Source of the DNA: Styela clava
Taxonomy: Eukaryota
Direction: 5' to 3'
NCBI RefSeq assembly: GCF_964204865.1
Contig: NC_135257.1
Span: 13,950,001 to 14,014,000 of the forward strand
Length of the DNA: 64,000 nt
In this document: positions 12,421-56,990 of the stretch, one piece after another
How positions within the stretch are numbered: position 1 is the first letter of the stretch
How the letters are laid out: the number at the start of each line of letters is the position of its first letter
Notes under the pieces: model-generated
Database searches by the model: none
Seen by the model: the letters and a program-made list of their open reading frames with translations, nothing else
Told to the model about the DNA's origin: nothing
Position numbers and translations under genes: made by a program

Positions 12421-12492
12421 TCAATCTCTTGGTGGAATGGTTGGAACGATTTCAGTAGAATATGCTGAATCTGCACTTCCTATCATCGATGT
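12421..12492 (-). CDS. Adaptor-like gene exon 7 (terminal)
   Basis: tgattcag|TSMIGSADSAYSTEIVPTIPPRD*TGA. Confidence 0.78.
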   Translation of the reverse strand, partial: TSMIGSADSAYSTEIVPTIPPRD

Positions 12493-23329: not shown

Positions 23330-23935
23330 ATCCCTAAAATAACACGCGAATCATACGACAGCACGAAAAACGGATTTGCTTCAGGATTGTCGAAGCCGTG
23401 ACCATACCGGTGACGGATCGTGGTATTAAAGTGCTTTGCAGAGAGGACGAAAGACAGTAAGGCCACTTAATTATTGTTGGTTTTTCTTCCCCTTGATTAC
23501 GTTTCGAGGCCCCATTATCTGTCCGGATTAGACGCGTCAACCCGACAAAATTCGAAACTGTCTTTTTTACGATGGCCCTTGCATTATCATATCTCGATCA
23601 ATAATTTCGTTGGTTTATGCATAATGAAGTATAGTACAGCAACGGGCCACCTCACTTAGATTTCGGATTATCCTCGGTCTAAGTTTGATGAACTCATTAG
23701 TTTGGGATAACTATATTTTATCTGAAAAAGTGAAACTGGGGCCCCCCTTGCCTGCAAAGTAATTTTTCAGTCGGATTTATAGTTGTAATAACTTACGAGA
23801 GCACATCCATCCTATTTAGGGGAGACGTTTGTGGCATAAGATAAAAGACATCTAGATCACGAAGCGTGGCGTGGCATATGATTAATGCTTGTTTATGGCT
23901 CTACCCAAGCTCAACTATCAACAATGTGATGGTGA
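23330..23935 (-). promoter_or_regulatory. Duplicated non-coding element, copy 1 (putative enhancer/CNE)
   Basis: Its reverse complement matches 56609-56647 at 35/39, 56651-56667 at 16/17 and 56784-56805 at 22/22, collinearly, with a longer spacer in this copy. The regulatory role is inferred. Confidence 0.55.
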
Positions 23936-26900
23936 GCCTTAAACAAACGGTACACAAAATCATCGCTAATGTACGTTCTCGTCGACCAAAAGGCCATAAT
24001 TTGAGGAATCTTATCAGGTAAGGTTATCGGTGAAATATGATGAAAGCTTGTGGGTATATTTATTATACCTCTTTCTTGTGTGACAAAAATACAGCCTCTT
24101 CAACTGGTATTCTATATTCTATGACGTATATTATGGATTTTAATTGACAATATGGGGTAATATATATACCTTACGATAGGCTTGCGGAGACCCACAACGT
24201 TCCTCATTCAGACACACCTGTCAAAACATTTCATTTTTTTTTATAAGCAGAGTGAAATTGAATTAAAATCATAACATATAACATTAGGTTTCTTGAATTT
24301 GCATACCCTGTAATAAAGTTTATCCCTCTTTGTGTATGTTTTATCAAAATTAAAGTGAAAGAGTATTTAACACACGGGGCGAATAAATATAAATCAATTA
24401 AATGAAGTGCTCTAAGCAGTTTTGCAATTTTTCTTTCGAAAAAAATCAATTAATGCTTATTTTCAATTTGAGGGAAAATTTAAATTAATCAAATTATTTT
24501 TCAACTCTTTGTAATGAATGCAGATAAATGGGCGTTATATAGTAAGATATTTGATATATAGTCAGTCATTAAAATCCATACCTATGACTTGCAGGGGGTG
24601 ATATGGCATTTTTGTAATTTTTCAAGGATGCTCAAAAAAGCCATTCAATTGGATGTCACAATTGTTTTAACATTGTATTTAAAAATTGAGTTTTTAAATG
24701 TATTGAGTACTACTGCTTAACATGCCGGTGTATAGAATTGTGCTTGCGTCAGACAATTTATCTCAATATTACACCGACCCTCTGCATTATGCTTATTTAT
24801 CATTGTAAATCTGGGTGATAAATAAGCATATGTGCGTTAAAACGAAGTTCATCTGATAAACCAAAGCAAATCGGTAAAAGTCACTTCTTGTATTGGATGT
24901 TAATGTGATAGTTTTTTCAACTATTTTTTCCCCCGGATCAGTTATGAATGACTGATACATGACGCCTCGAGAGGGCGGGCTTTCTCTATTGATCAAGCGT
25001 ATTCGTAGATAAAATTTCACATAATTTGTTGGAAAAAAATCACAAAACTGTCACCGCAACGAGTGTATTGTTGACAAACAAACAAATCATTTTTATTAGT
25101 TCATGTTTTGACAAACTGATCAAGCTGTTGCAGCACCACCAGGTACAATCTGATAAAGTGTTTAATATGGGGTGTGTTAGTTTCGTACACAGTGTATATT
25201 TATGCAATATTAAAATTGATAACAATAATCAGGTTGTTTATGACTTTAGTTTTATACTGTTTATTCGGCTATTATCACTTACTCTTAAGAAAAATTGTTA
25301 TTTTTCTGCAATGCTTTTTTTGTAACTTTAAAACTATTTCGCTGAAAATTATATTTGTCTCCACATGCTACGATTCAGTTGGTAGGGATCCAAGGTATAA
25401 TATTGCGTTAAAATCTGGAAAATGATTATTATTTTCTCAACCTATGTTCTGTCTCAAAATGCCCCACAACGATTCTATTTAAAATCAGTCCAGTTGTTTT
25501 TACTCCCGAATACTAAATTTGATTCAATGTTTATAATTCTGTATCAAATAACATGATGTAGTCAATAATGCAAACAAGCAAAAATTCCTTCTATTGCACA
25601 AAACTTGTCTATTTTATTATAATGACACAATCAGTTCATTACGTCGTAGATTTTAATTGTATTTTCTATTAGTATGTTGGTCATGTTTATAATATTGAAC
25701 CACATCTATTGTTTCGTCCAACTTTATTTGCCATACTGTTAAAGTGTAAACTGTATTGAAATATTGCAAAAGACGACACCATCTGTCAGGCAATTTTATT
25801 ACTCTCGATTAAAATGAAACTCTATCTTCTGTTTGTCTTCATTTTCGTAACGTAGAGTAAATATTATATAAAAATGACTCACAAAAACTAGACGGTGAAT
25901 CCATGTCTAATTTATTCCAAATTTTGTAATATACTTATCATTTGCTCCCGACGTAAGGTCCCCAAGGGAGGTAATCGAGACTGGACGACGCCGCGGGAAA
26001 CGTTGAGGTTTAGCGAATTACGCATTTATAAATAGTTGTCGCCAACGGAATTAACCATATTGATCTCATCATGTCTTCAGTAAGACGAACAACTTTGAAG
26101 TGTCAACCAAGGGCGGATTGATCTCAAATCAAGGATTCTTGACGCATAGAATTTTAATTAAGAATGTTTGATATAGGAGAACCATCCCACGTTCAAAAGG
26201 TCTCCGGCACATTTTTTCACGTTGTCCTCAAAGGTTGGCATGAGATCCTGGATTGCAACAGTTACTGATGGCGTGTGCATGAAAAATACCATCGGTATAA
26301 AATTATACGTTTTGTAATACCAACATCGATAAAGCAGATTCAATACTTTTAAAAATTACCCAAAGCATAGCTAGAACAGAAAATAAAAGTATAAATGACC
26401 AGATTACACTACGAAAGTAAACATCGTACTAAATTTTGTTTAAATTAAATAAATGTAACCAAGTTTTTCCTAACATTGTTGCCAATTGTATTTTTGACTA
26501 TACGATAAAAATATAGCTCTTATCAATTATAAACATAACACTTGTTCAAACCATTTGCTACAAAACGAAAATACAAAATGTTGTTAAACACGGAAGATAT
26601 TTTATCAGTAATTTTCTTAACAAATTGTAAAATATGTTGACTGGGTGCTGTCCAAAAGAGATGGTACAAGAATACAGCATACCGACAAACCGGTAACATT
26701 GAATCAAATGTAATCACAGACCGGGAATTACGTATTGAAATGAATGGAATAGAGAATAAAAACCTACATATGAGTTTGGCACAGTCTATGCATCTAAAAC
26801 AAAAAGGATACAGATACAGTTTGATGGGGTTTCGGCAGAAGCAAAAGATCTGAAAAACGCATGTATTTCGTTAAGGTTATTTTCTCCCTAATTATGATTC

Positions 26901-29088
26901 TGGAATGACTATACAACTAGAAAATGTGCAGAAACTGCACTATCTTGCTCTGTAAGAAAACTTATAGGATTGATAGTTTACTACACTACATTCTCGTAGA
27001 CGAGTGACGAACTCAACTGTCCCATTGTGGTTTTGGAACTATAATATATAAAAGACAAGTTGAAACGCTGTTATCTGCAGCTGCATTGCAATTTTCGATT
27101 ATGTCATAGATTCTTAATCTGACAACTTTTTCTCGGACCAGCAGAAAACTACGCGTACTGATAAATAGAAACACTATTTAGTGGGTTTGAGTGGTTGAAT
27201 TGTACTCAAATTAAAATTATTGAGCAGTAAAATATACTTGAGTATTTGATTATTTGTTTTATTTTTATGTTTTATAACAACGGTCAATTTCACCAGTGTC
27301 AATGTTTTACCGTATTGTACTTAAGCTTTATAAAGTATATTCAAAAATTTTGTTTTGAAATACCTGGCCTCAAAATCACAACTGTGACTAAGCGGTGGCA
27401 GAAACCAAAATAAATGGAAACCAAAGTAAGCGTGAAATTTACAAAATATCCTTATATCTTTTCACTTTTGTGGATAAACAAATACGTCAAAAGGTAGAAA
27501 ACACTTCCGGTTGACGTGGATATTTTGCTGGTTGTTTTGTTGCTCTAATTATATAGGCATCGGAAGCTGAGATTTTTCTTTTATTCAATTGCAAGATTTT
27601 TATAATAGTCATTTCAATATTTCATTCGCAAGCGGGAGACGCAAGTGAGCTTCGTGTTGAATTTTTTTTTACCTCCCCCCTCCCCACACATTTTTGCCTC
27701 TTGCCACTAGCCTTCAGTTACGTTGCCTCTTTTCTTATGTGTTGTTTTTGAAAAACATGTGTTTGATATTCCCAAAAGTAAAATTGCTAATCGCCTTTAC
27801 TGCGACGTTCTTGTGTCACCATTAGGTTATATCTGTTAATTAAATATATTTTGCTTTTTCCTAGCTATAAAAACAGTATGATATATTTAGAACGTTTTGT
27901 TATTAGGGTCACGTACTACTGAATAATATTGATGACTTAATCGCTTGAGGTCAATTCTGGGTGAGGATCAAGCAATTAATCGGGTCACGATAAAGGTAAC
28001 TGCTAGGTTAATGTTATTGACGTAAGGCGGACGCGAGCGACACGCGACGAAACAACTCAAATGTTGCGTGTCGCACTTCACCAAGACCATTGCTTACAAT
28101 GTGAACAATAGAAATGGTTACAACAACACGTGGCATTTTCATTTATCACACACGAAAACCAGACCACAGATATTCAGATTGTCATTTCCAACATCGATGA
28201 CTCTTATTATTAGTCTTGTGATGAAATTCATCTTCTGAACACTGTAAGCAGTTTTCATTCAACAAAATTCAATAAATTCTCAATAACTCAAAACGTGGCA
28301 AGCGCAATTTGAGGTACTTAAAAAATGTGGGGTAGGTGTTTTCTCCGATCTGACATTTTTGCATTTGTCGCGGGGTCTTTCTACAAAAGATCCTAATGTT
28401 TTATATAAAAATTGTCTCTAAACAAAATGTATTATATAATTTTTATTTTTACTCTAATTTTTGGTTTCGTATCATTCTTCGTGCACTACTCATTTTTGTC
28501 ATGTTGACGAAACGTCAAAATTAAAAACTCTCGTTTAATTCAACTTCAGCTTCATCTCGTCAAAAATTGCAAAGTTGTTATCACGCTCAAAACAACAAAT
28601 ATAAATTTAATTATTCATTATTCTTAAGTTCTCCAATAGTTTTACCAAACTAATATACAATAAACATAATGAAGTAGAATACTGCAAATGCAAGCATTAA
28701 AGAGAGAGGAGTTTGCTATATTTCAAGTCTATTATGTCAACTTAGTTGGTTTTAAACTTCATATAAGAACACCTAATCAGCTTGTCTAAGTAATTAGGAA
28801 GCTTAAACAATTGATAGGATAAAAGTTTGCCCTACTTGAATTTATGCAAATTATTTTAATTGAAAATAGGGGCAAATGAATTATACATGTGTGAGTTGTG
28901 TCAAAAAACGTGTGAAACAACAACACAATTAATATCTCGAAGTCATCTAAGTGTCAACTATAAATATTAAAACGTTGTCAAGTACAACACCGTGTAGAAG
29001 CAAATAATGAGAAAAAAGAAACGAACTTGCATGACATACACCTCAATAAAAATTAAAAAAAAAACTAGCGTAATAGGTCAAATTATTT

Positions 29089-29303
29089 GGTACTCCCGGA
29101 GTGTGTGTACCAGGTTAGGGTCAGGCCTTAATTTTATTCGATTTTACTTATTTTAGTTCTGTTACGAGTTCGGGGACTGTCTGTGTTAGCCAAGTGAATA
29201 TACCCCCTGCCCATATAAGTTTCAGTTCTTTTACATAACTTGATGTAAATGCGGCGAACAAAATTAGTTAACTCCATATTGGTACACACACTTCTGGAGC
29301 GCC
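29089..29303. mobile_element. 215-bp MITE with 24-bp imperfect TIRs and perfect 8-bp TSD
   Basis: The left end ggtactcccggagtgtgtgtacca matches the reverse complement of the right end, ggcgctccagaagtgtgtgtacca, at 20/24. TSD aattattt at 29081-29088 and 29304-29311; internal ggttagggtcagg. Confidence 0.88.
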
Positions 29304-29944
29304 AATTATTTCACATGTTTTTTGTTCTCGATATGAGCTAAAGTAAAGTGAAATCAATTGCATGCATATGATTTAAATCTATATGAAAGTTGAAAGTAGA
29401 TCTTGACGGAGATTTTTATGATTCAAAAGTTAGACGAAATCGTGAATATAAATAAATTAGTAACATTACCTCAATATTTGTTGATAAAAATTTAGATAAA
29501 TTTATATTGATATTATATATATGAATATATAGGAATGACAATTTCACAATAAAACTGAAAAATCTATTGTTTTCTGAATGCAATATTTTTTACACACAAA
29601 AATCGGGTTGTGAAGAGCAGTCGTTATTTTATCGCTATCAATTTTATTTGATGTTTGGTGTTAAAAGTATTTATAAAAATTACTTACTAAATAAGCAATC
29701 ATATAAATCAAAATAATTAAAAATCTATTTAGACAAAAAAGGTTGCAATTGAAATTTTTGTTTCGTGGTATTGATAATTGAAGCTCGGTCCACCATATTA
29801 GGAAAGATTTATTGCACTTAGGTATATTATAATTGTTATTGGTAAAAACAAAGTATAGGACGGTTTAGCAGCCAGATAAGCTAATGGCTCATTCTGTCAA
29901 ACAATAATTAATTAGTAATAATTAATTCTGTTAAACAATAATTT

Positions 29945-30172
29945 GTGAAGAAAATGAAATAAAAAAAATAGGTTATTGAAAAATGAAAATGAACAGAATT
30001 ATAAACAGAAAAAATGAATCAAATTTATTTAAGAATAAAAACAAGACAAAAGTAGGAAAGAAGTTGGATAAAATAAGAGACAATTGAGCACTAAGTAAGA
30101 GAAGAGAGGAATGGAGGCATGGAAGAAGAAGATGAGAAATACAGTAAAGAACAACTAAGAAAATAGGAGTAA
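29945..30172 (+). repeat. Purine (A/G)-rich low-complexity tract
   Basis: Strong A/G skew on the plus strand, which explains the F/L-rich spurious ORF 29973-30197. Confidence 0.55.
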
Positions 30173-33100
30173 GATTTTTGAACGTGTCAAGATGCATTAA
30201 TAAGTAGTAGACTAAGTTTAAAATTTTCTTATTCCAATTGTTGTTTGAGAATCAAATTTTCTGTATGCACTTTCTTCTGAGTGCATATATATGTCGCGAT
30301 AATAATCGTCGTGTGTTTATATCTTGAGGCATTGTGGTAAAATAAATCTATTTATTTGATGATCGAAGGATTAGACGCGAGAACACATAAATATTTAGAG
30401 TTGGATAATTTCATTCAGGCAATCTACCACTTCATTAGGAAATATTTTACTATGATTGTAATCAGCAATACGTGGAATCACGCTATATTTAATATCTGGT
30501 GGTCTTCATTAGTCTTTACAACTGTGATGCATAACTTTCGCTTTCACTTACTCGATAGAATTAAGTTAATATAAGGCATTAAATAAATATAAAGCAAAGA
30601 ATTTGAATAAAAAATTCAAATTTATCAATTAATTGTTCAATTTAGCCTTGAATGGTTTTTTGACATGGAAGTTAATTGCAGACGATAAAAGTACATATCT
30701 GAACATTTTACATATTGGTGTTTCACTGAAGTTTCATCGACCACAGGAGCTTATAGGCTCTATGTTACAGAACTTACTGTTTGTAGTGGTAAATAGTATA
30801 TGACTGTAAATTACTAAATGGTCTCCAATCATTTGCATTCAATCTTTACCAGGTCCCAGGCTGCATGTAGAAGTTCAAGGCGTCCTCCCACGTTTGACGT
30901 GAAATTAAAAGCTCATGATATTCTTTCTATATCTTTGTTTAGAAAAACACTCTCATTGCATTTGCACCAGTGGAAATGTGAAAGAAAGGGAGCTAACTGC
31001 GATGTATTGCGTTTAGTTCCTGAGTATGTATGTCGAAATTTCGTTATCAATTCGTTTTCACTTTGTATTATCTACTTAATAATTTTGAAATACTTAACAA
31101 TGAAGAAGGTAACAGTTGCGTACAGAAGTTTTATTGGAGTATCAAAATGCGAAGGACTGAATGTTAAAATTGAGATATTTGTAATCAGATTAAAAGGCAA
31201 TATCTTCTGAGTATCAATAAACAACACTCAAAACTCCCATGTCAGAGAACCACACGAACATTCTAATCTTTTCCCCATAATAAGTTATTTATTCCTCCAT
31301 TTTGTATGCGGTTGAGTCGTCTACGTCTTTCTGGTACAACCAGGTCGAAACAGCTGAATATTGTGTAGCGATGACACTGCGATATCCCAACTTCTTTTCA
31401 ATAGACAAGTCTATTAAACATTTATAAATATTGCAGACGTCGGGAATTCTTCCTGGTCGCCCGTATGACCCTACCCTGACGCTGTGGATTATTATAAATA
31501 CTTTCCAACACTTGTTTCAGATATATATTTAGACCTCGAGTAACCGGCTCCTTTCTTCAATGAACGACTAGAGTTGTTACTGAGATCTTAGTTTTATACG
31601 CCATCTAGTGATGAACTTTAACCCCGATTATGAGTCTATTTTTCCAAAACCTGTTAACTCCGTTTTGAGTAGAACGAAAACGCACCAAGAAAATAATATT
31701 CAACTAATACTTCGAGAATATGGCATGTCGGATAGCTGATTGGTAGATGACCTACGTTGGTGTGGCTTCTGTGTGCGTAGTAGTAAATGTGCTAATTAGT
31801 TTCAACACGTTCATCAAATTTCATGCTTCACGACAAATCTAAAATTTACAACGCCGACCTCTGTGCCTCATTGATGACTTCAACGCCTGAGAACCAAAGA
31901 TTTCGCACTATGTCTTGACCTGCCATAGAACGTAACCTCGTATTGATTGATGTTTGCGTTCATAAGTGCAAGTCACTCATTAAATTTTCGACCGCAAACC
32001 TCAAATCCCGGGTGTCAAGATTACTCGCGACGTCGCGGAGCCTCCGTGACTTCCCATGGGAAGATTTTAACTAGATGCAAACAGATATTAGCACACAAGT
32101 TTATTAGTAAGATATCGGGAATGCGAATTTTATTATCTGACTTATCGAAGCATGGTACATTATATTGAAACGTACTAATTTAGAAAATACATAAATTTGG
32201 ACCAAAGAATATAATATACAGATTATGTAATTTTTAAATTTTATAAAATCGAATACTTTTTCATGATTACTACTTACAGGCTCTAACTTTACTAACATTA
32301 CTATAGTAGTTAATCAATAATTAATTAATTAATTAATAAAAAATTTGAGTCGCCAAAATATTGCACATTGAAATTATAGTGTATGTCAGCATTAAATGGA
32401 TTGCATCATACCCACTCATTCTTGTCCCTCTGGTATTGTCTTCACAAGTACATATCAAAATATAATTACAAACAAAGTATATAGAACACGGGAGCATGTT
32501 CAAATATATGTACAGCAAGGTAATCCAATTGTTGAACAATTTTACCGAATATCATATGTACCGAATGTCGTCATATGGCGGGTGTCAAAAGTAGTAAAAA
32601 TGCTCTCAATCTTCTACTTTCTGATGAGGTGTTGCGACTTTGCTTTGAGATGAAAAATTGTTCAACACTTATTGCCGCTTATTTTAAGCACGTTTATGTC
32701 ATTACCCATTTGGAAATAAACTTTTTTTCAAGTAATTTTGATTGTTTGTTGATTTCATCAAAGTAAACTGTTTTTAACTTGAAAATATATATTTTTTAAA
32801 TTGAACTTCGCAATTTTATATTTGCGTTATATTTTTATTAAAAAAATGCACTTAAGAAAGTATAATTTTCCTATTAACCAGCATTAGCATATCTAAACTC
32901 AATCGGTTATTAAGTGTAACACTATACTGTTATACGACCTTGCGGCCAATTAACAAAAATTTTCCGACTCATTGCCTCAAAATAACGTTTCTTTATATTT
33001 TCACTTCTTTCATCTTTTCTGTCACATTTAAATTGGCGTATTTTATAACTATTCTTCAGTTCCTAAATTCATGGGTAATCAACTCATTCAATTGCCCTAA

Positions 33101-35848: not shown

Positions 35849-36178
35849 CTGTGCCGGAATTACCGTTGGGTAAAGCAGGCTGAAGCCTAGAGGCCTCGAG
35901 CGCTGGGGGCTTCAACATTCAATTATTTTGAACTATTATAAGCTTTTGGGCTGAAAAGGCTTGCTCCAGAATAAAACCAGTTCAAATTTCCTTCAACCAA
36001 TCAATCGATTTAAGAATCCTTGTTTCAAGTGTTTACCGTTTAAAAACTTAATATGGTCTAATAAATGAACTTAAAAAGCTTTATTAAGAGATCGATATAT
36101 AGGTAAATCTAAGAATTATTATATTTTTCACCACGTCAGACCTTGTTTGCCGTAGGCCCGTCTATAAATCCGTCCCTG
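35849..36178. mobile_element. Degenerate MITE (cagggccggatt-type ends)
   Basis: Left end ctgtgccggaatta versus right-end reverse complement cagggacggattta (10/14), with GC-rich subtermini (gcctagaggcc / cgtaggccc). No TSD is retained. Confidence 0.5.
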
Positions 36179-37524: not shown

Positions 37525-37569
37525 GCCAGATACTCATACTTGGCCAGATACTCATTTAGTCGGATGCTC
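37525..37569 (+). repeat. Short ~18-bp-period tandem repeat
   Basis: gccagatactcat at 37525 and 37543, with a degenerate gtcggatgctc at 37559. Confidence 0.65.
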
Positions 37570-38873
37570 TGGGATCCATTTTACCCATATATTCATCGCC
37601 GCCAAACTATGTCAATAACTTTACATCTCTGGTTCGCAGTCCTAGCTAGAACATACGTCCTATGTCTGGGTAAAATTTGTTACCCAGCAAGCAAAATTAC
37701 CTTAATATGTACTTAAAAAATAGAAAATTCGAAGTTACAAATTTATGAATTCTGTCTGAAAAAAATTGATGCTTTATGATAAAAATAATATCGTTTGTAT
37801 TAAATAGATCATGTTGAATTTTACTTTATGCAAATTTCTGGAGAATCCAATGTTTATTTGAGGTCCAAACTCAGGATTATTTTACAAACCTATGAACAAT
37901 TTTCTTCTCAATTCGTCGTTAACAATATCAGAGAAGTTACCATTTATGATGTAAATATACAATTAGATTTCGAATGAGTTCAGAAATATGTATAGTAACA
38001 ACGTACATTTACGCTAATTCAATTTATATTTTCAGTGCTGCAGTGCAGAAGGTATAGCTTTTATATCATAGATAACCAAAAAGTTGTGAAATTGAGCGGT
38101 ATAACCGGAACACCGTCAAAATTAATCTGCTCATCAATGTATAAATACATTTTCAACTTAAACATTGAATGAAGCTCATGTTTCAGATGCAATCGCAGTA
38201 ATACCTTAAATATTTAAGGTAATTTATAAACGCACGTTGTGTGTTGTGGTTGCTTCTTCGTTTATTTATTTAGCAAGTGACAGATCGTATCTCTTGTTCG
38301 AGAAAGAATTGTCATCTTCAACCGAGTTCATGCGCATTTTCGTATTTATGATTCGGTTTTTGCACTCTTTTTTATATAAATTGTTTAAATCTGCTTTTAG
38401 CAGCGCTTGTCGTCTTATCTGATCATTGTAAAGTTTCAGCCATTAATGGAATTTTTTTTAGCTAGGTTATTACGAACCCGAAACAAATGCATAGCCTACA
38501 AAAAGTTTTTTTTATTACATTTCAAGCTTTGATGAAAATGTGAATTATTAACACTTATTAAGATCAATAGGATCCGTACAGTGAAATATATTTGTTTATA
38601 TTATTTATTTTCCCGTTATATGAGTTCGTTTATATTGCAACCGTCAGTATAATCCGACTTGAAGAAAAATTCAATGCGGAGTTGAGAGGGAAGGTTTTTA
38701 ACATATATATATATATCATATATTCGCGTTCGGTTATCATTTCGAAAAGAAGAAACAGTTTTAAGCTGGTTTAACTTTCCAAACGCTCACCTGATGCAGG
38801 TGGATTATGAATGCATTGACGTGGAATGTTGTGTACGGTTTGTTTAACTCTTCAGTTTATCATACCTTACTAA

Positions 38874-39075
38874 GCTGACCTTGAGTGTTGCCACAAACAC
38901 GCAATTATCATGCCGTGTCACGGTTGGTGGGCATCAGCCTTTCATCTCGAGTGATGAGTGATCTTGCTAATCTCTAAAATCCATTATTTTTCATCAAGTC
39001 GGAGGACTTCCTCGCATCGTGACGGGTCTAAGACTGTGCTGATACCCGGTAATGGGGTATCGCGGTGAAATCTAC
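38874..39075 (+). promoter_or_regulatory. Duplicated non-coding element, copy 2
   Basis: 38874-38925 matches 56609-56660 at 40/52 ungapped. Further collinear blocks are tttcatctcg, tgctaatc, cattatt(t/c)ttcat, atcgtg and taatggggt. Confidence 0.55.
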
Positions 39076-39977
39076 CTTATTTGACAAACTAAAAATGTCT
39101 AAGCAATCATTCGTTTTTTTTGCCAAGAATTTTACTGCATTTGGACGATAATACACAAGGATGTTTTGTCTTCTATAAATAAAGTTTGCATTCAATTATT
39201 TTATAATTGTAGAATTTGCATGCTTTTTCTTGCCAAATTAGTAATGTATAAACAAACAGAAACATAATGCAAAAAATGATATTTTTCAATTCTGAACCAT
39301 GTTTAATACTGCTCAAATGGAATGGAAAAATAGGAATTACTTCACACCCTTTGAATGATTTGTTGGTTGCTTAGTCCTATACCAGTATCAGAGTTTTGTT
39401 AGACCAACTCGTATGAAACAGTCTACCAATAGTATTTCTTAACAGCTCAATATTTGCAACTAACTAAATAAAATAATCTGTATAAACACCGAAAGGCGTC
39501 AGAATCTGGTCTTAAAGTTGTGTGGACAAGTAACCTGTTGCATCTAAATCTCCATTATTTTTGTTTCAATACTTTGTTAACTGGTCGTTCTGGGGTAGAG
39601 TGAGGATAGCACCATGCTTATTTCGATGATTCGCCAGGTCACTGATTGATGCAGAAAACATACTGTCATTTCAGTGATAAAAATTAAGTGAACTACTTCG
39701 TCCAGAAAACAAAATTTCATAAACTTAAATGTATCAGGTATCTTACATAGTGACTATTGATTTATATGAATGCGAATCCGTGTTTTAGCGCATGAATTTC
39801 AAAAAATCGAGTACCAGAAATCGCCTCAGTTCTGATACAAGTGCAAAATGCGTAAAACTCAAAACTATACAATACCAACCAAGAAATATAAGAATCGGGT
39901 AGAATGCAGAACAAGATTGAATATCTATCATGCATTCTTGTTTTCCATAATGAAAATATAATTTTAATCTATTCACT

Positions 39978-39998
39978 AAAAAAGGTTCGCCATCCCTG
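39978..39998. mobile_element. Isolated hAT-type terminus
   Basis: aaaaaaggttcgccatccctg is similar to the terminus at 787-807. Confidence 0.4.
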
Positions 39999-41633: not shown

Positions 41634-41892
41634 GAGAAGTTGCCAGTTTTTAGTAGCACCCTACAAATACGCTCGTTATCAAATAAAATTGACATTTTAC
41701 CCCAAAAAATTTAGGAACATAAAAATGCATCTTTATAATCCGGATTGTGCATTGTGTGAGTTTGGTACTGGAAATTTAGCACATATACCCATGAAAAATA
41801 CGTTTTTTCCATTCAGAAATCAATCATCTCGAAACACAATTAGGTGCAATGATGAGAAAATACCCAAACCTTGCAATTAATTGGCATCCCTG
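41634..41892. mobile_element. Possible decayed MITE (cagggttgcca-type ends)
   Basis: gttgccag at the left and ttggcatccctg at the right. A related lone end, cagggctgccaa, is at 57334. Confidence 0.35.
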
Positions 41893-43943: not shown

Positions 43944-44502
43944 CATGGGCCAGCAACCTTTTGTCGCCCGCGGGACAAAATTTAGATTTGCAAGCTTTGG
44001 CGGGCCGCACATATTTTTAAAAATCTAACGTATGTCCGATGAAACATAATATTTTCACACGGATCAGAAATTGAAATTTTAGATTTTAAACAGCGCTCGA
44101 AGACTGCAACAACTCGTGAACTCAACTCAGTAGTCTTACAGGAGGAAACAAATTTACAACTTGAATTTAATGTCACACATGTTGTTGCATCACGACTGAT
44201 AGCTTTTCGACGTCAGACGGCACACTGGATGAATCCAAGATTAGAACATTTTCTAAATGGGCATCCCTAATCCGAGTTCTCAGATTTCCTTCAAGAAGAT
44301 ATTTTTATAATAATCAAGCAGTGATACATCTCTCGAATAGAATATGGATTTTATTACCTCATTGCATTGCATCTCAAGAAGCTCTATTCGAATATTTTCT
44401 GCGCCATTGAACCCTCTGCACTCAGCATCTACTTTTCTGCGTGTTGCCATTTGTCTAATTATAATTAAATTGTAGGCTCGTTAATTGCTATTGAGACCCC
44501 TC
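43944..44502 (-). mobile_element. Internally deleted hAT transposon (Buster/SPIN, GTF2IRD2-like transposase remnant)
   Basis: Ends catgggccagcaacc...gcgggccgca and ttgagacccct, enclosing transposase fragments on the minus strand. Confidence 0.8.
44167..44450 (-). pseudogene. hAT transposase remnant (N-terminus fused to C-terminal dimerisation region)
   Basis: MATRRKVDAECRGFN (compare the KRKVDxECRxF N-terminus of SPIN/GTF2IRD2-like transposases) is joined to ENIRIELLEMQCNEVIKSIF...LLDYYK. After a frameshift comes RTRIRDAHLENVLILDSSSVPSDVEKL...QHV*H* (compare the RxRLTDxHL...PDI...QxSH* C-terminus). Confidence 0.8.
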
Positions 44503-47500: not shown

Positions 47501-50500
47501 TGTCACATAGTGGTTGCTTATATTAAATCGTTTTGTCTGTAGGGACTTAGGAAAAGGTTATTAGTAGAGTTACTCCGTGGGAAACATTGGAGTTGACGCT
47601 TTTCATCTTTGGTGCCGTGATGCTCCCATTGGACGCATTAGATTGTTGTATACAGGCCAGGGTCACCGACATCGCGGTAATTTAAGACGGTTTGGCAAAA
47701 GATCGCCCAGGATAAGCTGATTCATTAAGTCGCACTGATTCACCAAACATGAATTTCGTACACAATACGCGATATGGGAATAAAGGAATCTGGATTCGAT
47801 TTATCCGGAAATCAACAACAAATTTTTATTACCGATTTCATGAAACATGTTTTGGTATTTAAAATCGACTATCAGATGTAAAAATTTGTAAGTAATTTAG
47901 TGGAATATATCTCATTGATTACATTTGTATCAGACTAGTCTACATTTACTTGTATGGATACAAAATTTTACAACAACATTACTTTCTTTTTTCCCCACGG
48001 CAAACAACATTTAAAAACAGTTTGTTATTCTTGTGGCGGTTGATTTTCGACGAAAACAACGACCCGTTCGGTCTAGGGACAAAACAATCAGATTATTAAC
48101 AATTAAGCTCGCCTCAAAGTCTCTTGCGCTCGAGGTAAATACGAGAGAAAGTGGGTGATTTGTACCGACCCAGTCTCGATGTGGGGCATTTTCAAAGGGA
48201 TTAACTCTGGGTAAGGATTACGTTCCATCACCAGCAAGTGACAAAAGGGTCGTTTCTGCTTGAAGGTAAAAAGCTATCGATAAGAAAATTAAAATTCCAT
48301 TGTCGGGAAGAAAAGCAGACGAACAAACAAAGAAGCATAAACACTGTCGAAAGGTTAAAATGCAATAAAGATTATGACCGAAATGAATGCAGTATATATA
48401 GGCAACAATCTTAAAATAATACTTGTTTTTGTTATGCTACAGATATATTTAAATAATCATTCATTTTATTCAATTATTCATTCGAGTATGAGTCGGGTGT
48501 AGGCCACGCATTCGATTTTTGTGGTATATAAGTATGAGAGGAAAATTTTGATCGAAAAAAACACTCATAAAGTGTTAATTTTTCTACAATATATCCAGCA
48601 TTGTTATCCGTGATAGGAAAGCCTACGAGTTACTTTTATACATAAAAGTGAGGATGTGTTATTTAATTCTTTGAAATAAAAAAATGTTGATTTTTCATGA
48701 AAAAAGTCTCAATAAAAAGATGAGATTTCTCAGACGGGACAAATAGATCGTAGGTGTCAATGTAGATTTTGACAATTGCTCTACAAATAATCTGCTTGTA
48801 TCTAAATATCACATAGTAAATTGATTATAGAGATAACTCGAATAAAAATGAGAAGATGTCATAAAATTGAGGTAAATAATCTCATTATCCAATATTTCGT
48901 ATTAATGCAAATTTTATATTTAAATATAAATTCCAAACATCATTTTTATTCATATACCCAATTTGTGATATTTACAAAAATTTGAAAACAATAAATAAAT
49001 GAAATTAGTATAAAAAATACAAGTAACGGGTAAATATTTTGCTGTAGGTTTGGTTTAAAATTAAAATAATCGAATAATAAGAATTCGACACTCACATGTA
49101 TCTCGTAATTATTGGATTTCATAGTAGCAAGTATAAACCATTAGCGCTGAATTCGGATAAAAAAAAATTGCTTATAATGAATAAGATCACATAAGAGCTT
49201 GTTGGAGCATTGTGATGCAATACATATCTCTCGCAATTGAAATTCTCAAATTGCAACATTCACAGACAAAAATTTGTGTTTCCAAACTGCGTCGCTGTTT
49301 TAACTTCGGAATTGTTTATCCATCTAAAGCTTAAAGCTAGTAATAGGTGCGCTATACGTCAAGCCTCCCTTGTAGTTTATATAAGCCGGTCCCTAATCCC
49401 TCTTGTGTTAAAAGCCTCACGCTGGTATTGGTCAACTGATTTATTCAGTGTATCTAAGGGCAAATGTATATTTGCTAAAACTTTTTAGTTGTTTTATCGA
49501 ATTTAAGGTTTCAAGAATAAAACGATAGATTGATTATCATTTTAAAACAGGGCCAACGATATTATAAAAACTGTGAAATAGAAGTTGTTTTTCTGTTTAC
49601 TTTTACTTCCAGTGAAATAAAATATTCTCCCGAAAACCCGAAAACATACAAAAAAGGTTTTCAATCCAAACTTTTTTCTGACCCAGACAGGCCACAGTTT
49701 ATACCCATAATAACTCGAGTTTACAGATTATCGACTTAGGCGCGAGAAACAAAACGTGACATGGAGGAAGAAGTGCGCGGCCGTCGTCGCTGACGCGTTT
49801 CAGCAGTGACAGTATATTATAATAAAAATAAATGAAAAACTTCTTCCCGAGTTCGAGTGGACAAGTTCTCACTCTGTTTGGAATTTAGATCGAGCAGTAT
49901 ATATGAATAATTTGTCCCAGTTATTCGTTCATGAATAACATCCGGACTTTGGTGACAAAGCATGTCATAATCAAATTTTATATTTTAGTCGTGTGATTAA
50001 AATTTAATCGAAATCTTGGTCAAGATCTGTCTTCGACCAAATGAGGAAAATGGGAAGGAAATAGTACCTGAGCGATTTGCATTTTATTTCAAATTACAGT
50101 CAACTTCTTGTTGTATTTATTTTCATGAAAATTGCGTGAATCAGTGGAGTTCTGTAAGATTTCTTGCACAAAAATGACAAAAAAAATGTATTTATTGTGT
50201 CTACATAGGACTAGATTGAGTAGCAAGACAGACGCCCCGCGTTTTACCAGACAGATTCTCCGTGCGGTCTATATCGTTATAGCGGCGAGAAGAACGCCGT
50301 ATTCTCGGAATCGATTCAAGCGGATATCAGCATGAACCAAAGCGGACATTTTAGAATTTCTTGCAATAAAGGGAAAAGTATAAAAAGAAGGTATTTTAGC
50401 ATAGTATAATGTATAGTAATATTTGGTCAATAATGAATAAAAATATTAAAACACTAGAAGTAACCAAGTTTCATTAAAGACATTTTGGATGATTAATTTT

Positions 50501-53500
50501 GCAAGTATTTGGAATGAGTTGGTATTTATGATACCTATTGCGTTATCTACGTTGTAAAAGTACATTCTGGTTTAGTTGATTGCAAACTTAATCAATCTAT
50601 TGCATTGAAAACCTAAAGATCAATTGCTAAAACAGGCTATTTTACCCTGTGTGCATGGACATTTTGAAACCAGAAACATTATAATTTGAATTAATTTATT
50701 CTCTCGTGTTAATGAAAAAGAATTTAAATTTAAACTTATAAAGTTCTTATATTTCACTTAGAAATTCATGCTGCAAACCAGTAAACTTATTTCAAAATGT
50801 TTACAAGTGATAGTTAAACAGAAAAATATTGTCGTGGTATTTTAGAAGAACAAAAATTGTATTTAAATTATGCATCTTTTCAATTATTTTATATAACAAC
50901 ACAAATACCAAATATTATTTGACGAATCTTTTTCTCAGCGTTTCTAGAACATAATTTAACCCGATTATATTACATAATCTTTCATTGTATAGTATCAGTG
51001 CATTTTTTTATAAACAAAAATTGTTTATACATGTTGCTATATGGGTTCATTTGTGTATATTAGAACGTAGTACAAAATAAATATTTTTTCACATAATTTT
51101 TACATAAACATAGTATTTTAAAAATGTTTTATTTTAATTTTTGTATAAAGTATACCGATGTAAAAGTTGGATACAAATTAATATTTGCTAAGCATTATTG
51201 TGTGGATTTCCGTGTTATCCATACTGCTTAATTTCGAAGGTAATTCGTGTATTGGGTAATAATTTCACAACTAGTAGAACTCAACCAAACGTAATTAAGT
51301 AATCGTATGAAAAGTTGAGATAAATTCATTGCATTGTAACGTTATAACGTCATGTTGGAATTTAAGAAATAACACTCCCGTATTGCAATTTATCTCCAAT
51401 ATATCTTTCTTGTGTTATTTTTCACCCAATGTATTGCGAGAAGTACTAAGAAATGCGCGTAATTTCAAGTAGAAGCGGATATTACGGGACGGTAATCACA
51501 CTTGTTAATTACTTATTAAATAGCCTATCATTGGTATCGTGAATTTATCCAGAGTATTTTTAAAACAGCGAAATCGAAAATGTGGTGCAACACAGTTCAA
51601 GGCACGTTGCCGACGCATTAACTCACTGCAAACGTTGTTATTAAAATGGCGGCCAAATACCGACGCGACTAATTGCATACGCGGATATAATATCGACGAG
51701 GGCAAGCGATTTAACACTGAACGGTAGCATCGAGTTGTATTGCTATGCTGAAATTGCTTAATAATAAAAATAGGAGCATTTGGTCATTGCCGGTATGTAT
51801 CGCCTTATACTCGTTGAAATCTGAAAATTGGAAAAATTTATTAAAAAAATCATGAAATGCGAAATAATGATATATTTTACTCAGTACTGCCTCATTATCA
51901 TAATATTTTTTAGATCGCAATCTTATATCTGGCTATTTAAAAAAGTAATCGTCTCTCTAAGGCGCTTTTTAGCTTCAAATCAATATTGAATATAAAGACC
52001 GCTCATGTTATTTAGAATTCAGTGACATATAACACGAACCAACAAATTACATTTTTCAACAATAAATTGTTAATTATTAATAGTTGAATCCGAGAACACG
52101 TTGACGAAACTGTTTATGGAATTTGACATTTTGTAAATCTGAACTAAATAGTGTGTAGTAATTAATACTAGTATAATTTCACAATCAATTAAATTAATGA
52201 AGATTAGATTCTCTATATCTTTCGCTAGCATATTTTTAATTTGATAACTTGTCTTAGATTGTACTTAAGGGAAGTAAAAAAAGTTTGGCTAAAGAAAGAA
52301 ATATATTGCCACAATTGATATTGTTGTCTTCCAAATAGCACTTTACCTGTAAAGTTACCTTGTTTTTAATATATTACATGTCAGGCTATATTTAAAAAGA
52401 TTTTTTTTGTATATATATTACGCTGAGCTAAGAATTACATTTTTCATCTTTGAATTTTTTTTTGAGAAATATTAGTACTCTATTATTCACTTGCCTTGAA
52501 TGCTCCAAAGACGTAGAAAGTTAAACTTTAAACAATTCTACTATTCTACTATATTTTGTTGTAAACACAAAGTTTTTAAAGCTTGATTTTCAAATTCATG
52601 CCAAAATTATGTCGTGACTTTTATTCAGTTCTATAAACAATTCATCAACGCGACTGTATTACATTCAAATTCGAGTAAAATAAACAATTTATTCAAGTGA
52701 ATTTTCAAAAGTTATGGAAAGATTTCTTCTAATATTCCCTAATAATATTTGACATAAACTAATGAGATTAGCGCCAAGATGAGGCTTAAATCGGACCGAA
52801 CAGAGGGGCGCATTTGCTACAAGGGTGAAAATCCTCATCGACATTTAGGCCTCACTGAATCTAAGACATATAAATCATACAAACAATATTTCAATATGTT
52901 TCTAATGCAGAAAATATCAACCGAGTGTCATAATCAATTTGAAAAAAAAAAAACGAATACAGCTTTTTATATTTACGCTACGTTACCGATGGGAAGTTAT
53001 AGAGGACGATTCGGGAACAAAAAAAAATTCAGAAATTTAAAAATTATTTTTGGTACACTCGTTGGTTGTCTAAAATGCACTTTTATTACACTTTTAATAA
53101 GTTAGTGCACGTAAATTCGCGAATGAAAAACATAACAAAATGATTAGTGAAATCGTCTCGCTCAGGGGCAATTTGTTGTGTGTGAGATGTAGTGTGACTT
53201 TAGCCCGGTCTTTATCATGCCTGCAATGTGCTTTACATATGATTCGATTACACTTCACTTGATTTGTCTAAAACGTGATTAGGTTTTGAATACGGCTTGA
53301 ATTATTTGGTCATATTCAAACATCACAGTTGTGCGTCCATGGAAAATTGAAAATTCAATATTGCAGGACTCTGTCATGTAATACCAAGTAATCATATTAG
53401 ACCCTAACGGATTTGCCTAATGATGAAAAAGCGTTACATTCCAATACACAATTTGGACACGTCGAGGAATAGAAGAAGGGATATAGAGTCGCAAAATTGA

Positions 53501-54663
53501 CGCGTCATGAACAGCACAAATAAACAGTAGACGTGGCCTCATATTTTTGAACTTAGAATTGTGATTTTAGAAGTTGTTATAATCGCGAAAATAAAAATAG
53601 AATTCTACATGGTATGTTTTAGGAGAACACTTCAAAATCCGCGCCATTTACTATTTGAACTGAGGTATTAAGAAAACCAGTCAATTTATATTGAAGCACC
53701 AGAAAAAGCGCGACAATCGTCCCAGCGTACGTGCAAGGCGATGATTTTATCAATAAAAGAATAAATTAAGACGTCCTCTAAAATCAGTGCTAATCGTCGC
53801 AATGCAGATGCCTATGTTTATGTCATGTCGTTGGGTGAAAGATAGATGGTGTTTTCATGGAAATTGACACTTCTGTTGATCACGAAGGGTGATGAAAAAA
53901 TTGCTATGACAAGCTATATCTTTTTTTGATCTAGACTGCCATCTCATGTGCCGCGACTGTTTTCGTTATCTTTCGTGTAACCTCTATTATCGGATGTTAA
54001 TTGTTTGATTGATTTTGGTTTATAAGCTGCAGTTTTGGCCAATTTCTTTCATAAGAACGATTGGATTTAGGTATTTTTTGGACTGACTGCATAAGTAATT
54101 CCATCGCAAAAAGTACTTTAAAATGCAGCAAAATTAACACTTAGTACCTATATTATGACTACGAAAAATTAGTTTTTTTTTCAGTATGCAATTTTTAAAG
54201 CTTCAACGAACAAACTGATTCATCATCTAGTATCAATGATTTGTTAGCCTATTTGGTACAATTTTGATTTAGTATTTTGGCGACAGAGTTTTGTTAATTT
54301 AGGACAAATGTGTGCAGTGGTCTTGGATAAATATAATACAAACAATAAGCAGTTGTAAGTCATAACTGGTTCAATATCTACATTGATTATTACAGGTATG
54401 TTGTCGTTGCGGATTATAAAATTATACATTTGTAATGATGATGTTTGGATCAACCGCTACGTCTTCATAGTAATTAGTTGATCTTATTGATTTTTTAAGA
54501 AGAAACGATTTATGAACCACCTATCCTTCACCAAAAAATAATATTTTTTGACAGACAGTCGTTAATGATTTAGTGTTTGCGCTTGTTATTTTGCTTGGCA
54601 ATTACGCTAATTCTGACAATAATGAAGCGAGATATTGTGATCTTGTCATTAGGCAGGTTTCAG

Positions 54664-54720
54664 TATAAATTAAAATCGCAATTATCGTGCTATAAATTAA
54701 AATCGCAATTATCGTGCTAT
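54664..54720 (+). repeat. Perfect 27-bp tandem duplication
   Basis: tataaattaaaatcgcaattatcgtgc occurs twice, plus tat. Confidence 0.9.
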
Positions 54721-56593
54721 TCAACTATGATTTGCGTTTGATTATGATCAGCTTCAGAACAGGCGCATGCAATAAAAATTATTTTATAAAATGTGCTTAT
54801 AATTTGTATAATATATATTATACTAGCACGTGTAATGGGACGCTATTAGCTTATTTGAAAAAAAATTGGGTGGCATTTTGGGAGGTTATTACATATACAG
54901 TGGTTTCATTATGAAATGCAAAAAATCTCGACATTCAAGGTATTACATAATATTATGCAAGGTAGGCGGCATAGATTAAAATGAATTGACTATAAAAGTC
55001 CGTGGTTTGAATATACTGTGGAATTACTTATATAAAGTAATATGGAAGACTCAAGAATGCATCATGTACCAGCGCCATTCATATCTGTAGTATCGTTACT
55101 CTATCGAGTGAAGCAGTTTAGAGTTCTTTGCTTTGTGCCGTTTTTTTTGGTTCCCCAGAACGAAGAATCTATCAATTTTTGTACCATCTAAATGAAAAAA
55201 ATACTTCAAAACAACTGATTCCATCATGTTTAACTTTTATTTTATTTTAACAGATTCATGTATAATTTTGTTATTTATTATGACTAAATAATGACTGCAT
55301 AAAAGTTCATCAAGCTCGGAGGAGAAGAAGAAACGAATTGGCTGATATCAGAATTATAAAAAGGTATTTGATCAAGTTTAAACTATAGGAAATGAATAAC
55401 TTTATAGTAAAAAAATTTAATTTGCGTACTGACAACTGATATCAAGTTTCCTTATTAGTGATGTTTCGAAAACATAAAACAAAATAGTTCATCAGTCAGT
55501 ATCGAAATATTTTGAAAAATACTCAAAAAGATTTTTGTAAAAAAAAAATTTAAAATATTTTCGCATCAAAAGTTTGCTGACGACATTAGCTCGGGGATAA
55601 TAACAGCACTGAAAATATAATAGATCCGCCATCCTATCCCGTGTTTCGGGGCAAAAAAGTGAAAACGGCGATCGAATTTCAAAAACACTCACAATAACCC
55701 GATTTTATTGATAAGAGAGTTGAAAGCAAATGGGCATATTTGTAATCAAATTTTAATTTTGTCAGAAATCACATCGAAAAAGATGTGAATACTCAATGAT
55801 TTAATAATTTATATAGTTTTATTTTTAAAAATGCCTCTTAGATAAATTTTGAATTTAATGATGATAATGAAAATTTATGAAACTAAATTGCAAAAATCAC
55901 ATAATGTTGAGACCGCACAAGATAACCGAGTTCATTGTATTGAACTGACAGATGCAGCAAAGATAAAGTTCGTTTAACAATTTAGATTGTTAATAAACGC
56001 ATAACCCAAGGCATGTAGAAGTTTATTTATTTATTTCGAATTAGTGGCTACTCAGATCGCTAGTATCAAGATAACTAAGTTCATTAAAAAACGACAGATC
56101 AAGTATTGGAATTTTTTCCGTCGTAAATATTTTCATTCTGAATACATAAGTGATATGGAAATCGAGAATTTGAATTGGAAATCGCAATAATGACATAAAT
56201 TATACAGTAAAATGAAATATTTTAATAAAAATTTATATTGCTATTCAATAATTCCAGAAATTATTATTTAGGACTTGATATTACCTAAAATTATACTTTA
56301 ATCTCTGTTAAATAATGCTTTTAAAATAATTGACGGTGGTGCTAGATTGGTTTATAAAGGACTGCTGTCGTTTGAAAGATATAGTCAACGCTCAACATCC
56401 ATTTTATTTTATTTTTTATGTTGTGTGCCTATAGTGCGAAATTCCTATTTGAATCTCATGTTCTGATAAATCGGTCCGGCATACCGAAAATGACATTTTA
56501 TCTCGAAAATTGAAAAAATTTACGTTAACTCAATTACTGGAAGCCAAAATTTTGCATTAGCGCTAAATCTATGCTTAGTTTGTTCAGAGTGGG

Positions 56594-56990
56594 TCATCAA
56601 TGTTGTCGGTTGAGCTTGAGTTGAGCCATAAACATGCATTTATCATACCGCGCCACGCTTCATGATCACGGTCCGTTTCATCTCGCGCGACGACAGACTT
56701 ACAATGGATGTGTGCTAATCACTTTTCTTTCTTAACAGTCATTATTCTTCATAAAGTAGTGATTCGCCCAGATCGTGGTATGGCTAATCCGGACAGATAA
56801 TGGGGTCTTGAGGGGTAATCACTACAGCACAAAATCAACAGTAATCAACGGTTCTAGGAGTTTGGCTTAGATTTTAAAAGGTTCCCCTAATTCCGTCATC
56901 AGTCATGAGCGTTCACAGTCCGCCAATCTCAAATGATTTCGTTTAGTGAGTTCTTTGTGTTCGTGTGACATTCGTGTTCTTATTTTAGAA
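56594..56990 (+). promoter_or_regulatory. Duplicated non-coding element, copy 3
   Basis: Shares ordered blocks with copies 1 and 2. It contains TGATAAAT (minus strand), TTTATGG (minus strand), TAATCC, CCGGAT (minus strand) and AGATAA. Confidence 0.55.

What the first reader, a model, noticed from the sequence alone, without database searches (positions are those of the whole stretch)
23330..56990. Three diverged copies of one non-coding element spaced 15-18 kb apart across a gene-free region (candidate duplicated 'shadow' enhancer family or ncRNA family)
Seen directly: the same ordered blocks occur at 23935-23330 (minus), 38874-39075 (plus) and 56594-56990 (plus). Copy 1 vs copy 3 matches 35/39, 16/17 and an exact 22/22 (ctaatccggacagataatgggg), with weaker collinear blocks downstream. 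Copy 2 vs copy 3 matches 40/52 ungapped plus five further blocks. The spacers differ by up to ~200 bp while the blocks persist, and I see no TIR, TSD, poly-A tail or shared ORF. That pattern suggests constraint rather than neutral TE decay (inference). Established motif matches in the blocks are Pbx-Hox-like TGAT(T/A)AAT, posterior-Hox/Cdx-like TTTATGG, K50-homeodomain (Otx/Pitx) TAATCC, ETS-like CCGGAT and GATA AGATAA; ETS+GATA is the known grammar of the ascidian Otx neural enhancer. Against this, copy 2 has several CpG-to-TpG differences and has lost the TAATCC/GATA block, so it may be decaying.
Basis: partly seen in the sequence, partly recalled or inferred. Interest (0 to 1): 0.75.

Follow-up and report, generated by a model that had tools for sequence, protein, structure and literature searches.

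The report
Triplicated non-coding element near basonuclin gene
Three old, diverged copies of one short non-coding DNA segment occur only around the start of a sea-squirt basonuclin-type regulator gene, so they are candidate duplicated gene switches, but nothing yet shows that they work.

Summary
Three collinear, diverged copies lie at 23300-23971 (minus), 38826-39125 (plus) and 56555-57000 (plus). Pairwise E-values are 1e-7 to 1e-16.

The family is confined to this locus. Three whole-genome pattern scans and a sequence profile find only these three copies in 377 Mb. Two comparable repeat pairs from a control region are dispersed repeats with 555 and 1833 candidates. A SINE or other dispersed TE is refuted.

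The region is not anonymous. RNA contigs define a 5'UTR exon at 55252-55363, spliced to 64226. It belongs to Styela clava LOC120346667, a basonuclin-family zinc-finger gene. Copy 3 lies in intron 1; copies 2 and 1 lie 16 and 31 kb upstream.

I found no Rfam hit, tRNA, stable or covarying fold, shared ORF or terminal inverted repeat.

Best reading, at about 0.45: enhancer paralogues made by local duplication and inversion. Selective constraint is not shown: site-rate tests are non-significant and the exact 22-mer fits uniform divergence. Cross-species comparison was not possible. The kind is known, so interest is modest.

The parts
23300..23971 (-). Copy 1, the longest at about 670 bp. It is inverted relative to copies 2 and 3. 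It lies 31.3 kb upstream of the basonuclin-family 5' exon and 7.1 kb upstream of the minus-strand gene noted at 12421-16228.
   Evidence: profile hit 23836-23964 at 106.3 bits
38826..39125 (+). Copy 2, compact (about 300 bp) and the most diverged. It lies 16.1-16.4 kb upstream of the 5' exon. It lacks the TAATCC/GATA part of block 5.
   Evidence: profile hit 38822-38954 at 102.1 bits
56555..57000 (+). Copy 3 (about 445 bp), inside intron 1, starting 1192 bp after the donor of the 5' exon.
   Evidence: profile hit 56564-56690 at 105.7 bits; intron defined
56564..56690 (+). Block 0-2 of copy 3, the part shared by all three copies. It includes GCCAYAAACA (a forkhead-type RYAAAYA core in all three; motif recalled), TGATAAAT/TGATTAAT/TGATAATT on the opposite strand, and CACG.TT. 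The homologous stretches are 23836-23964 (minus) and 38822-38954 (plus).
56784..56805 (+). Exact 22-mer CTAATCCGGACAGATAATGGGG shared with copy 1.
   Evidence: these are the only two places in the genome at up to 3 mismatches
23510..23531 (-). The same exact 22-mer in copy 1.
55252..55363 (+). 5'UTR exon of the basonuclin-family gene (NCBI LOC120346667). It is preceded by the acceptor ttttaacag and followed by the donor GTATTT, and is spliced to window-equivalent 64226. This makes 55364-64225 intron 1.
   Evidence: RNA contigs of 4518, 4502 and 4695 nt in 3 of 4 runs; the 30-nt continuation is unique in the genome at C9:14014226; coding exons at 65284-69673
56866..57336 (.). Two short, low-depth, unspliced RNA contigs at 56866-57018 (depth 5.2) and 57083-57336 (depth 2.2), seen in 1 of 4 runs. 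They overlap only the 3' end of copy 3 and the sequence just after it.
   Evidence: tables 2 and 8; 0.28 of sampled words held by run X1

Best explanation
The three copies are paralogous pieces of regulatory DNA, most likely enhancers of the Styela clava basonuclin-family zinc-finger gene. One ancestral module of about 0.3-0.5 kb was copied twice within about 33 kb, once with inversion. The copies now lie at -31 kb (inverted), -16 kb and +1.2 kb (intron 1) from the gene's 5' exon.

Each copy keeps the same order of short blocks with variable spacing. All three keep block 0-2. Only copies 1 and 3 keep the TAATCC-GGA-GATAA block. So copy 2 has either lost inputs or is decaying.

Shown: the paralogy, the restriction to this locus, the non-coding nature and the position relative to the gene.

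Inferred: transcription-factor binding, enhancer activity, the target gene, and redundancy of the 'shadow' type.
For: - The paralogy is far beyond chance.
- Only three members exist in 377 Mb. The 22-mer at up to 3 mismatches hits 2 places, both here. Two degenerate block-1 patterns hit the three copies at 0 mismatches, plus 3 and 2 mismatched sites that share nothing else. The sequence profile scores the copies at 102-106 bits and the next hit at 20 bits, E 0.14.
- The same DNA search that returns 1 candidate for the element returns 1833 and 555 candidates for two repeat pairs from a control region.
- The flanks share nothing. There is no shared TIR, no tRNA, no Rfam family, no shared ORF and a 2-bp indel in block 1.
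- The copies lie in the 5' flank and first intron of a basonuclin-family gene. None of the 11 longest ORFs between 24 and 64 kb has a Pfam domain.
- The copies are GC/CpG-richer than the window: 0.415-0.445 against a mean of 0.327 with sd 0.053.
- Orientation independence and variable spacing between ordered blocks fit enhancers (established knowledge).
- Duplication as a birth route of redundant enhancers is documented: 18.3% of fly and 33.9% of mouse shadow-enhancer sets (PMC13345019, abstract read).
Against: - There is no functional or cross-species evidence of any kind.
- Within block 1, sites conserved between two copies are no more conserved in the third: Fisher p = 1.0, 0.81 and 0.31.
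- An exact 22-mer is expected in 3-35% of simulations under uniform divergence at 68-79% identity.
- JC distances of 0.35-0.56 could be those of neutral DNA that is simply not yet erased.
- If only about 0.5 kb was ever copied, the unlike flanks say nothing about age.
- Copy 1 is closer to another gene (7 kb) than to the basonuclin-family gene (31 kb).
- A second locus-restricted inverted pair at 50855-51002 / 63089-63219 shows that the region collects small local duplications. That also fits a neutral process.
Confidence: 0.45

Rival explanations
1. Neutral relics. A roughly 0.5-kb segment was copied twice by small local duplications (replication template switching or repair, one copy inverted). 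The copies are decaying without function and are still young enough to align.
For: - No site-rate heterogeneity in block 1.
- The 22-mer is compatible with uniform divergence.
- Divergence is graded at K 0.35, 0.50 and 0.56.
- Copy 2 shows CpG-to-TpG changes and lacks block 5 motifs.
- Another locus-restricted inverted pair lies nearby.
Against: - The block order is kept in all three copies while the spacers differ by up to about 230 bp.
- Copy 1's extra 281 bp is single-copy and not an inserted repeat.
- The copies are GC/CpG-rich islands in the control region of a developmental-type gene.
- None of this is decisive.
Confidence: 0.3
2. Transcribed units: enhancer RNAs, lncRNA exons, or alternative promoters or 5' exons.
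For: - Run X1 holds 0.28 of the words of 56400-57400.
- It gives unspliced contigs at 56866-57018 and 57083-57336.
- Copies 1 and 3 end in a splice-acceptor-like TTATTTTAG. In copy 1 this is followed by a 63-nt open stretch and GTAAGG.
Against: - The contigs miss blocks 0-5, have depth 2-5, show no joints, and are absent from 3 of 4 runs. They could be pre-mRNA of the host intron.
- There is no Rfam hit and no shared stable fold or covariation. The one low z-score, -3.05, is on the antisense strand of copy 2 only.
- The open frame of copy 1 is not shared by copy 3, where indels are not multiples of three.
Confidence: 0.1
3. An old low-copy non-autonomous transposon that moved only locally ('local hopping'), with its ends now eroded.
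For: - Three copies of about 0.3-0.7 kb lie within 33 kb in both orientations.
- The flanks are unrelated.
Against: - There are no other copies in 377 Mb by patterns and profile.
- There is no shared TIR, no tRNA head, no poly-A and no ORF.
- The 5' border is fuzzy rather than sharp.
- Real dispersed repeats of this genome are found readily by the same tool.
Confidence: 0.1

Closest known systems
Redundant ('shadow') enhancers born by duplication of an existing enhancer (fly and mouse survey, PMC13345019; abstract read)
   Same: Several sequence-related non-coding modules lie in the control region of one developmental-type gene. They are orientation-independent, and repeated duplication has enlarged the set.
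   Different: Here neither enhancer activity, overlapping expression nor the target gene is shown. The organism is a tunicate, for which I found no such case. That rests on my two searches only, and they did not target the question directly.
Duplicated conserved non-coding elements (dCNEs) of vertebrates (recalled from memory; the term appeared in search listings)
   Same: Paralogous non-coding blocks are kept near developmental regulators while the surrounding DNA is unalignable.
   Different: As I recall, vertebrate dCNEs mostly sit beside paralogous genes left by whole-genome duplication, and they are defined by deep cross-species conservation. Here all copies flank one gene, and cross-species conservation is untested.
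Dispersed short repeats (SINE/MITE) of this genome
   Same: Similar size (0.1-0.6 kb) and similar pairwise identity (65-85%) when two copies fall in one window.
   Different: Those have hundreds to thousands of candidates genome-wide. The element has three copies, all in this locus.
Transposon-derived redundant enhancers (PMC7093719; abstract read)
   Same: Related sequences serve as several enhancers of one gene.
   Different: That route needs a recognisable transposon family. None is detectable here.

Membership tests
Duplication-born shadow/redundant enhancers | Members share detectable sequence homology | tested here: met
Duplication-born shadow/redundant enhancers | Members lie in the regulatory domain of the same target gene | tested here: inconclusive
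   Copy 3 is in intron 1 and copy 2 is 16 kb upstream of the basonuclin-family gene. Copy 1 lies between that gene (31 kb away) and a minus-strand gene (7 kb away). No chromatin-contact data are available.
Duplication-born shadow/redundant enhancers | Each member drives transcription in an overlapping pattern | not testable with these tools
   Needs reporter assays, ATAC-seq or ChIP.
Conserved non-coding element (CNE) | Conservation at the orthologous locus of other species above the neutral level | not testable with these tools
A metagenome scan gave 2 hits that match only at the searched site.
Dispersed transposable element (SINE/MITE) | Many dispersed genomic copies | tested here: not met
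   positive controls
Dispersed transposable element (SINE/MITE) | Terminal inverted repeats, tRNA-derived head or poly-A tail | tested here: not met
   and the sequences. Target-site duplications were not tested rigorously because the borders are fuzzy.
Structured non-coding RNA / microRNA precursor | Stable fold shared by the copies, with compensatory changes | tested here: not met
   Sense-strand z-scores are -1.67 to +1.86. Consensus folds are -5.7 and -3.8 kcal/mol, with 1 of 21 and 3 of 12 pairs showing a double change.
Structured non-coding RNA / microRNA precursor | Match to a described RNA family | tested here: not met
   (0 matches, also at E up to 1)
Structured non-coding RNA / microRNA precursor | A defined transcript | tested here: inconclusive
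   Only low-depth unspliced contigs at the 3' edge of copy 3, in 1 of 4 runs.

The most novel reading that the evidence does not exclude
The triplet is a lineage-specific set of sequence-paralogous enhancers of the single tunicate basonuclin-family gene. It arose by two local duplications, one with inversion, and is now partly subfunctionalised: copies 1 and 3 keep the TAATCC-GGA-GATAA block, which copy 2 has lost. Together with the second locus-restricted pair at 50.9 / 63.1 kb, it would show a compact chordate regulatory landscape growing by repeated small duplications. It would also give a small system, testable by electroporation, for how redundant enhancers are born and diverge.
Probability: 0.25. 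Interest if true: 0.5.

Novelty: new member of a known kind. Interest (0 to 1): 0.3.

Why it matters
If the copies are active, they would be a clean example of redundant enhancers whose common origin is still readable in the sequence. The animal suits the test: each copy is a few hundred bases, and reporter assays by electroporation are routine in ascidians.

They would also give a first handle on the regulation of a tunicate basonuclin gene. My search for 'basonuclin' with 'ascidian' found no paper.

If the copies are neutral relics, the finding only records that this genome makes small local duplications.

Tried and rejected
Readings rejected or left unsupported:
- Dispersed TE: rejected by copy number, with controls.
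- tRNA-derived SINE: no tRNA.
- Known RNA family: none.
- miRNA-like hairpin around the exact 22-mer: no hairpin. z is -0.48 for copy 3 and +0.66 for copy 1.
- Coding exon: a 2-bp indel in block 1 and no shared frame. A 78-codon open frame in copy 1 is not shared.
- Hox or homeobox cluster context: of 105 homeobox matches genome-wide, the nearest on this contig are 1.3 and 2.2 Mb away.
- Larger segmental duplication: the flanks do not align. A candidate collinear block at 25292-25341 / 55503-55551 is A-rich and weak.
- Relics of extra basonuclin gene copies: the protein maps only to 65284-69673, with nothing inside the window.

Things left open:
- Spliced-leader origin of the 9 letters that precede exon 55252 in one contig. 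The 9-mer plus a donor is not in the window. Genome-wide it is rarer than its control, 74 against 139.
One metagenome scan gave two contigs that match only at the searched site, as expected by chance in so large a collection.
- A genome-wide baseline for locus-restricted pairs.
- I did not open any supplementary files. They may hold S. clava transcription-factor lists (PMC8122590, seen only in a search listing) that name this gene.
Full report
**1. The observation**

I read the three places and compared them inside the window.
- Default blastn: copy 1 (minus) vs copy 3 gives 72 bp at 83% (E 4e-15) and 38 bp at 87% (E 6e-7). Copy 2 vs copy 3 gives 83 bp at 72% (E 5e-6).
- Relaxed scoring over 13-kb neighbourhoods: 172 bp at 68% (E 2e-16) plus 65 bp at 74% for c1-c3; 83 bp at 72% (E 3e-8) for c2-c3; 125 bp at 66% (E 2e-7) for c1-c2.
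- Nothing else is better than E 0.01. The best such hit is an A-rich stretch.
- Multiple alignments show the same order of blocks in all three copies. Copies 1 and 3 also share a weak 3' part ending in TTATTTTAG.
- Spacers differ by up to about 230 bp. Copy 1's extra 281 bp is single-copy in the genome.
- In a whole-window self-comparison, 3 of the 5 off-diagonal pairs belong to this family.

**2. Copy number**

The window is C9:13950001-14014000 of a 377-Mb assembly.
- The 22-mer at up to 3 mismatches occurs twice, both times here (control 1).
- A degenerate block-1 pattern at up to 2 mismatches hits the three copies at 0 mismatches and three other sites at 2 mismatches (control 5).
- A second pattern hits the three copies plus two sites at 1 mismatch (control 0).
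- The five extra sites share nothing further with the element.
- A sequence-only profile of block 0-2 scores the copies at 102-106 bits and the next place at 20 bits, E 0.14. One caveat applies: only 150 of 15,381 first-look candidates were scored.
- Positive control: I took two arbitrary 60-kb regions, chosen before looking. They contain 115 and 8 off-diagonal pairs. The two distant pairs of the second region that I tested are dispersed repeats, with 1833 and 555 candidates and 40 of 40 scored matches each.
- The same tool returns a single candidate for the element.

**3. What surrounds it**

Earlier notes of this scan name the genome Styela clava. One search confirms this.

RNA-type runs were found and laid on 55001-61000.
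- Contigs of 4518, 4502 and 4695 nt, in 3 of 4 runs, begin with 55252/55258/55272-55363.
- They then continue with letters that are absent from the window and unique in the genome at C9:14014226, which is window-equivalent 64226.
- The exon is bounded by ttttaacag| and |GTATTT.
- The downstream open frames are 100% identical to NCBI 'uncharacterized protein LOC120346667 [Styela clava]' of 1278 aa. Its best named relatives are vertebrate basonuclin-1 and -2 (E about 1e-62 over the zinc-finger pair).
- The protein maps to 65284-66690, 67012-67146 and 67388-69673, and to nothing inside the window.

So 55364-64225 is intron 1. Copy 3 starts 1192 bp into it. Copy 2 lies 16 kb and copy 1 31 kb upstream of the 5' exon. 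Copy 1 is also 7 kb upstream of the minus-strand gene another reader noted at 12421-16228.

None of the 11 longest ORFs between 24 and 64 kb has a Pfam domain. No homeobox gene lies within 1.3 Mb.

**4. What it is not**

- There is no Rfam match at gathering score over the window, or at E up to 1 over the three copies.
- There is no tRNA.
- Single-sequence folds of both main blocks on both strands give z-scores between -1.67 and +1.86 on the sense strand. The single low value, -3.05, is on the antisense strand of copy 2 and is not shared.
- Consensus folds are -5.7 and -3.8 kcal/mol, with 1 of 21 and 3 of 12 pairs showing a double change.
- No inverted terminal repeat is shared by the copies.
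- A 2-bp indel inside block 1 and frame-breaking indels elsewhere exclude a shared reading frame.

**5. RNA on the element**

Only run X1 holds part of 56400-57400 (0.28 of words). It gives two unspliced contigs at 56866-57018 (depth 5.2) and 57083-57336 (depth 2.2). These lie on the 3' edge of copy 3 and just beyond it. There is nothing on blocks 0-5 and nothing in the other three runs.

This could be enhancer RNA, an unannotated transcript, or pre-mRNA of the host intron. X1 also has the deepest mRNA contig.

**6. Is there constraint?**

- Inside block 1, columns where two copies agree are not more often kept in the third: 63/22 vs 24/9, 63/15 vs 31/9 and 63/9 vs 37/9, with Fisher p = 1.0, 0.81 and 0.31.
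- An exact run of 22 in 409 aligned sites arises in 2.6%, 7.1% and 35% of simulations at 68%, 72% and 78.7% identity.
- Block-1 JC distances are 0.35 (c1-c3), 0.50 (c1-c2) and 0.56 (c2-c3).
- The argument 'blocks persist while flanks are erased' holds only if more than the element was originally copied. That cannot be known here.
- In favour of function remain the kept block order with elastic spacing, the GC/CpG-rich character, and the position in the control region of a developmental-type transcription-factor gene.

**7. Motifs**

Their background rates in the window are 0.2-1.3 per kb.

The only motif-like feature kept in all three copies is a forkhead-type RYAAAYA core (ATAAACA / ACAAACA). 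The consensus is recalled from memory, and its background is 4 per kb. I treat all motif readings as leads, not evidence.

**8. Comparison with what is known**

- Enhancer duplication inside a locus is an established birth route of redundant enhancers: 18.3% of 420 fly sets and 33.9% of 9,051 mouse sets (PMC13345019, abstract).
- Transposon exaptation is the other documented route (PMC7093719, abstract).
- Duplicated CNEs of vertebrates are recalled from memory.
- 'basonuclin' with 'ascidian' finds no paper. None of the 10 papers listed for basonuclin/Ciona/tunicate/Styela holds the word basonuclin. That search required only 2 of 4 terms, so it does not prove absence.
- If functional, this is a new member of a known kind.

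**9. Verdict**

- TE and structured RNA are rejected.
- The 'gene-free' claim is corrected: this is the 5' flank and first intron of a basonuclin-family gene.
- The enhancer-paralogue reading is the best available, at about 0.45, but it is unproven.
- The neutral-relic reading remains strong, at about 0.3.
- Interest is 0.3.

Noticed in passing
window 55252-55363 and beyond the window end (equivalent 64226-69673; L006): A basonuclin-family zinc-finger gene (NCBI LOC120346667, 1278 aa, named 'uncharacterized'). It has a non-coding 5' exon, an 8.9-kb first intron and two basonuclin-type zinc-finger pairs. It is expressed as a roughly 4.5-kb mRNA in 3 of 4 RNA runs.
   Followed up: yes
window 55243-55252: In one RNA contig, nine letters (GTTGTATTA) that are not in the genome at that place precede the exon exactly at its AG acceptor. 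They do not end in the AAG that earlier notes give for the spliced leader. No donor-flanked match exists in the window, and there is no genome-wide excess (74 against 139 for the control). The upstream partner of this acceptor is unknown.
   Followed up: partly
window 50855-51002 (minus) and 63089-63219 (plus): A second locus-restricted inverted pair of non-coding segments: 65% over 151 bp, E 3e-5, AT-rich. One member lies 4.3 kb upstream of the 5' exon and the other in intron 1. A 20-letter pattern from it hits only these two places at 0 mismatches genome-wide.
   Followed up: partly
window 38653-38670 and 38986-39003: An 18-nt inverted repeat (17 of 18 complementary). It pairs block 4 of copy 2 with a site 315 bp upstream, as if a scrap of the element were copied again in reverse.
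   Followed up: no
window 2808-3866 (minus), with relatives just before the window start (equivalent -3822..-2764 and -14509..-13277): A tandem duplication of about 6.6 kb carrying a 353-aa open frame (92% identical copies), plus a third relative at 40% identity. None has a Pfam match.
   Followed up: partly
window 23230-23466 (minus): A 78-codon open frame runs through the 3' part of copy 1. It includes a 63-nt stretch (23333-23271) bounded by TTATTTTAG and GTAAGG that encodes a hydrophobic peptide. The frame is not open in copy 3, so it is probably fortuitous.
   Followed up: partly
window 25900-51800: About 20 further GC- and CpG-rich islands of roughly 200 bp (GC at least 0.41 against a mean of 0.33) are scattered through the intergenic region. 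They are possible further regulatory elements or small exons, and none is repeated in the window.
   Followed up: no
window 1310-1772: A roughly 460-bp imperfect palindrome (60% self-complementary, E 3e-20) inside the duplicated unit at the left end of the window.
   Followed up: no
L044:1400-1600 and L045:5360-5510 (control regions on C13): Two short dispersed repeat families of about 110-120 bp. One has copies at 87-92% identity and the other at 95-100% identity, which suggests recent activity. They have 1833 and 555 first-look candidates.
   Followed up: partly
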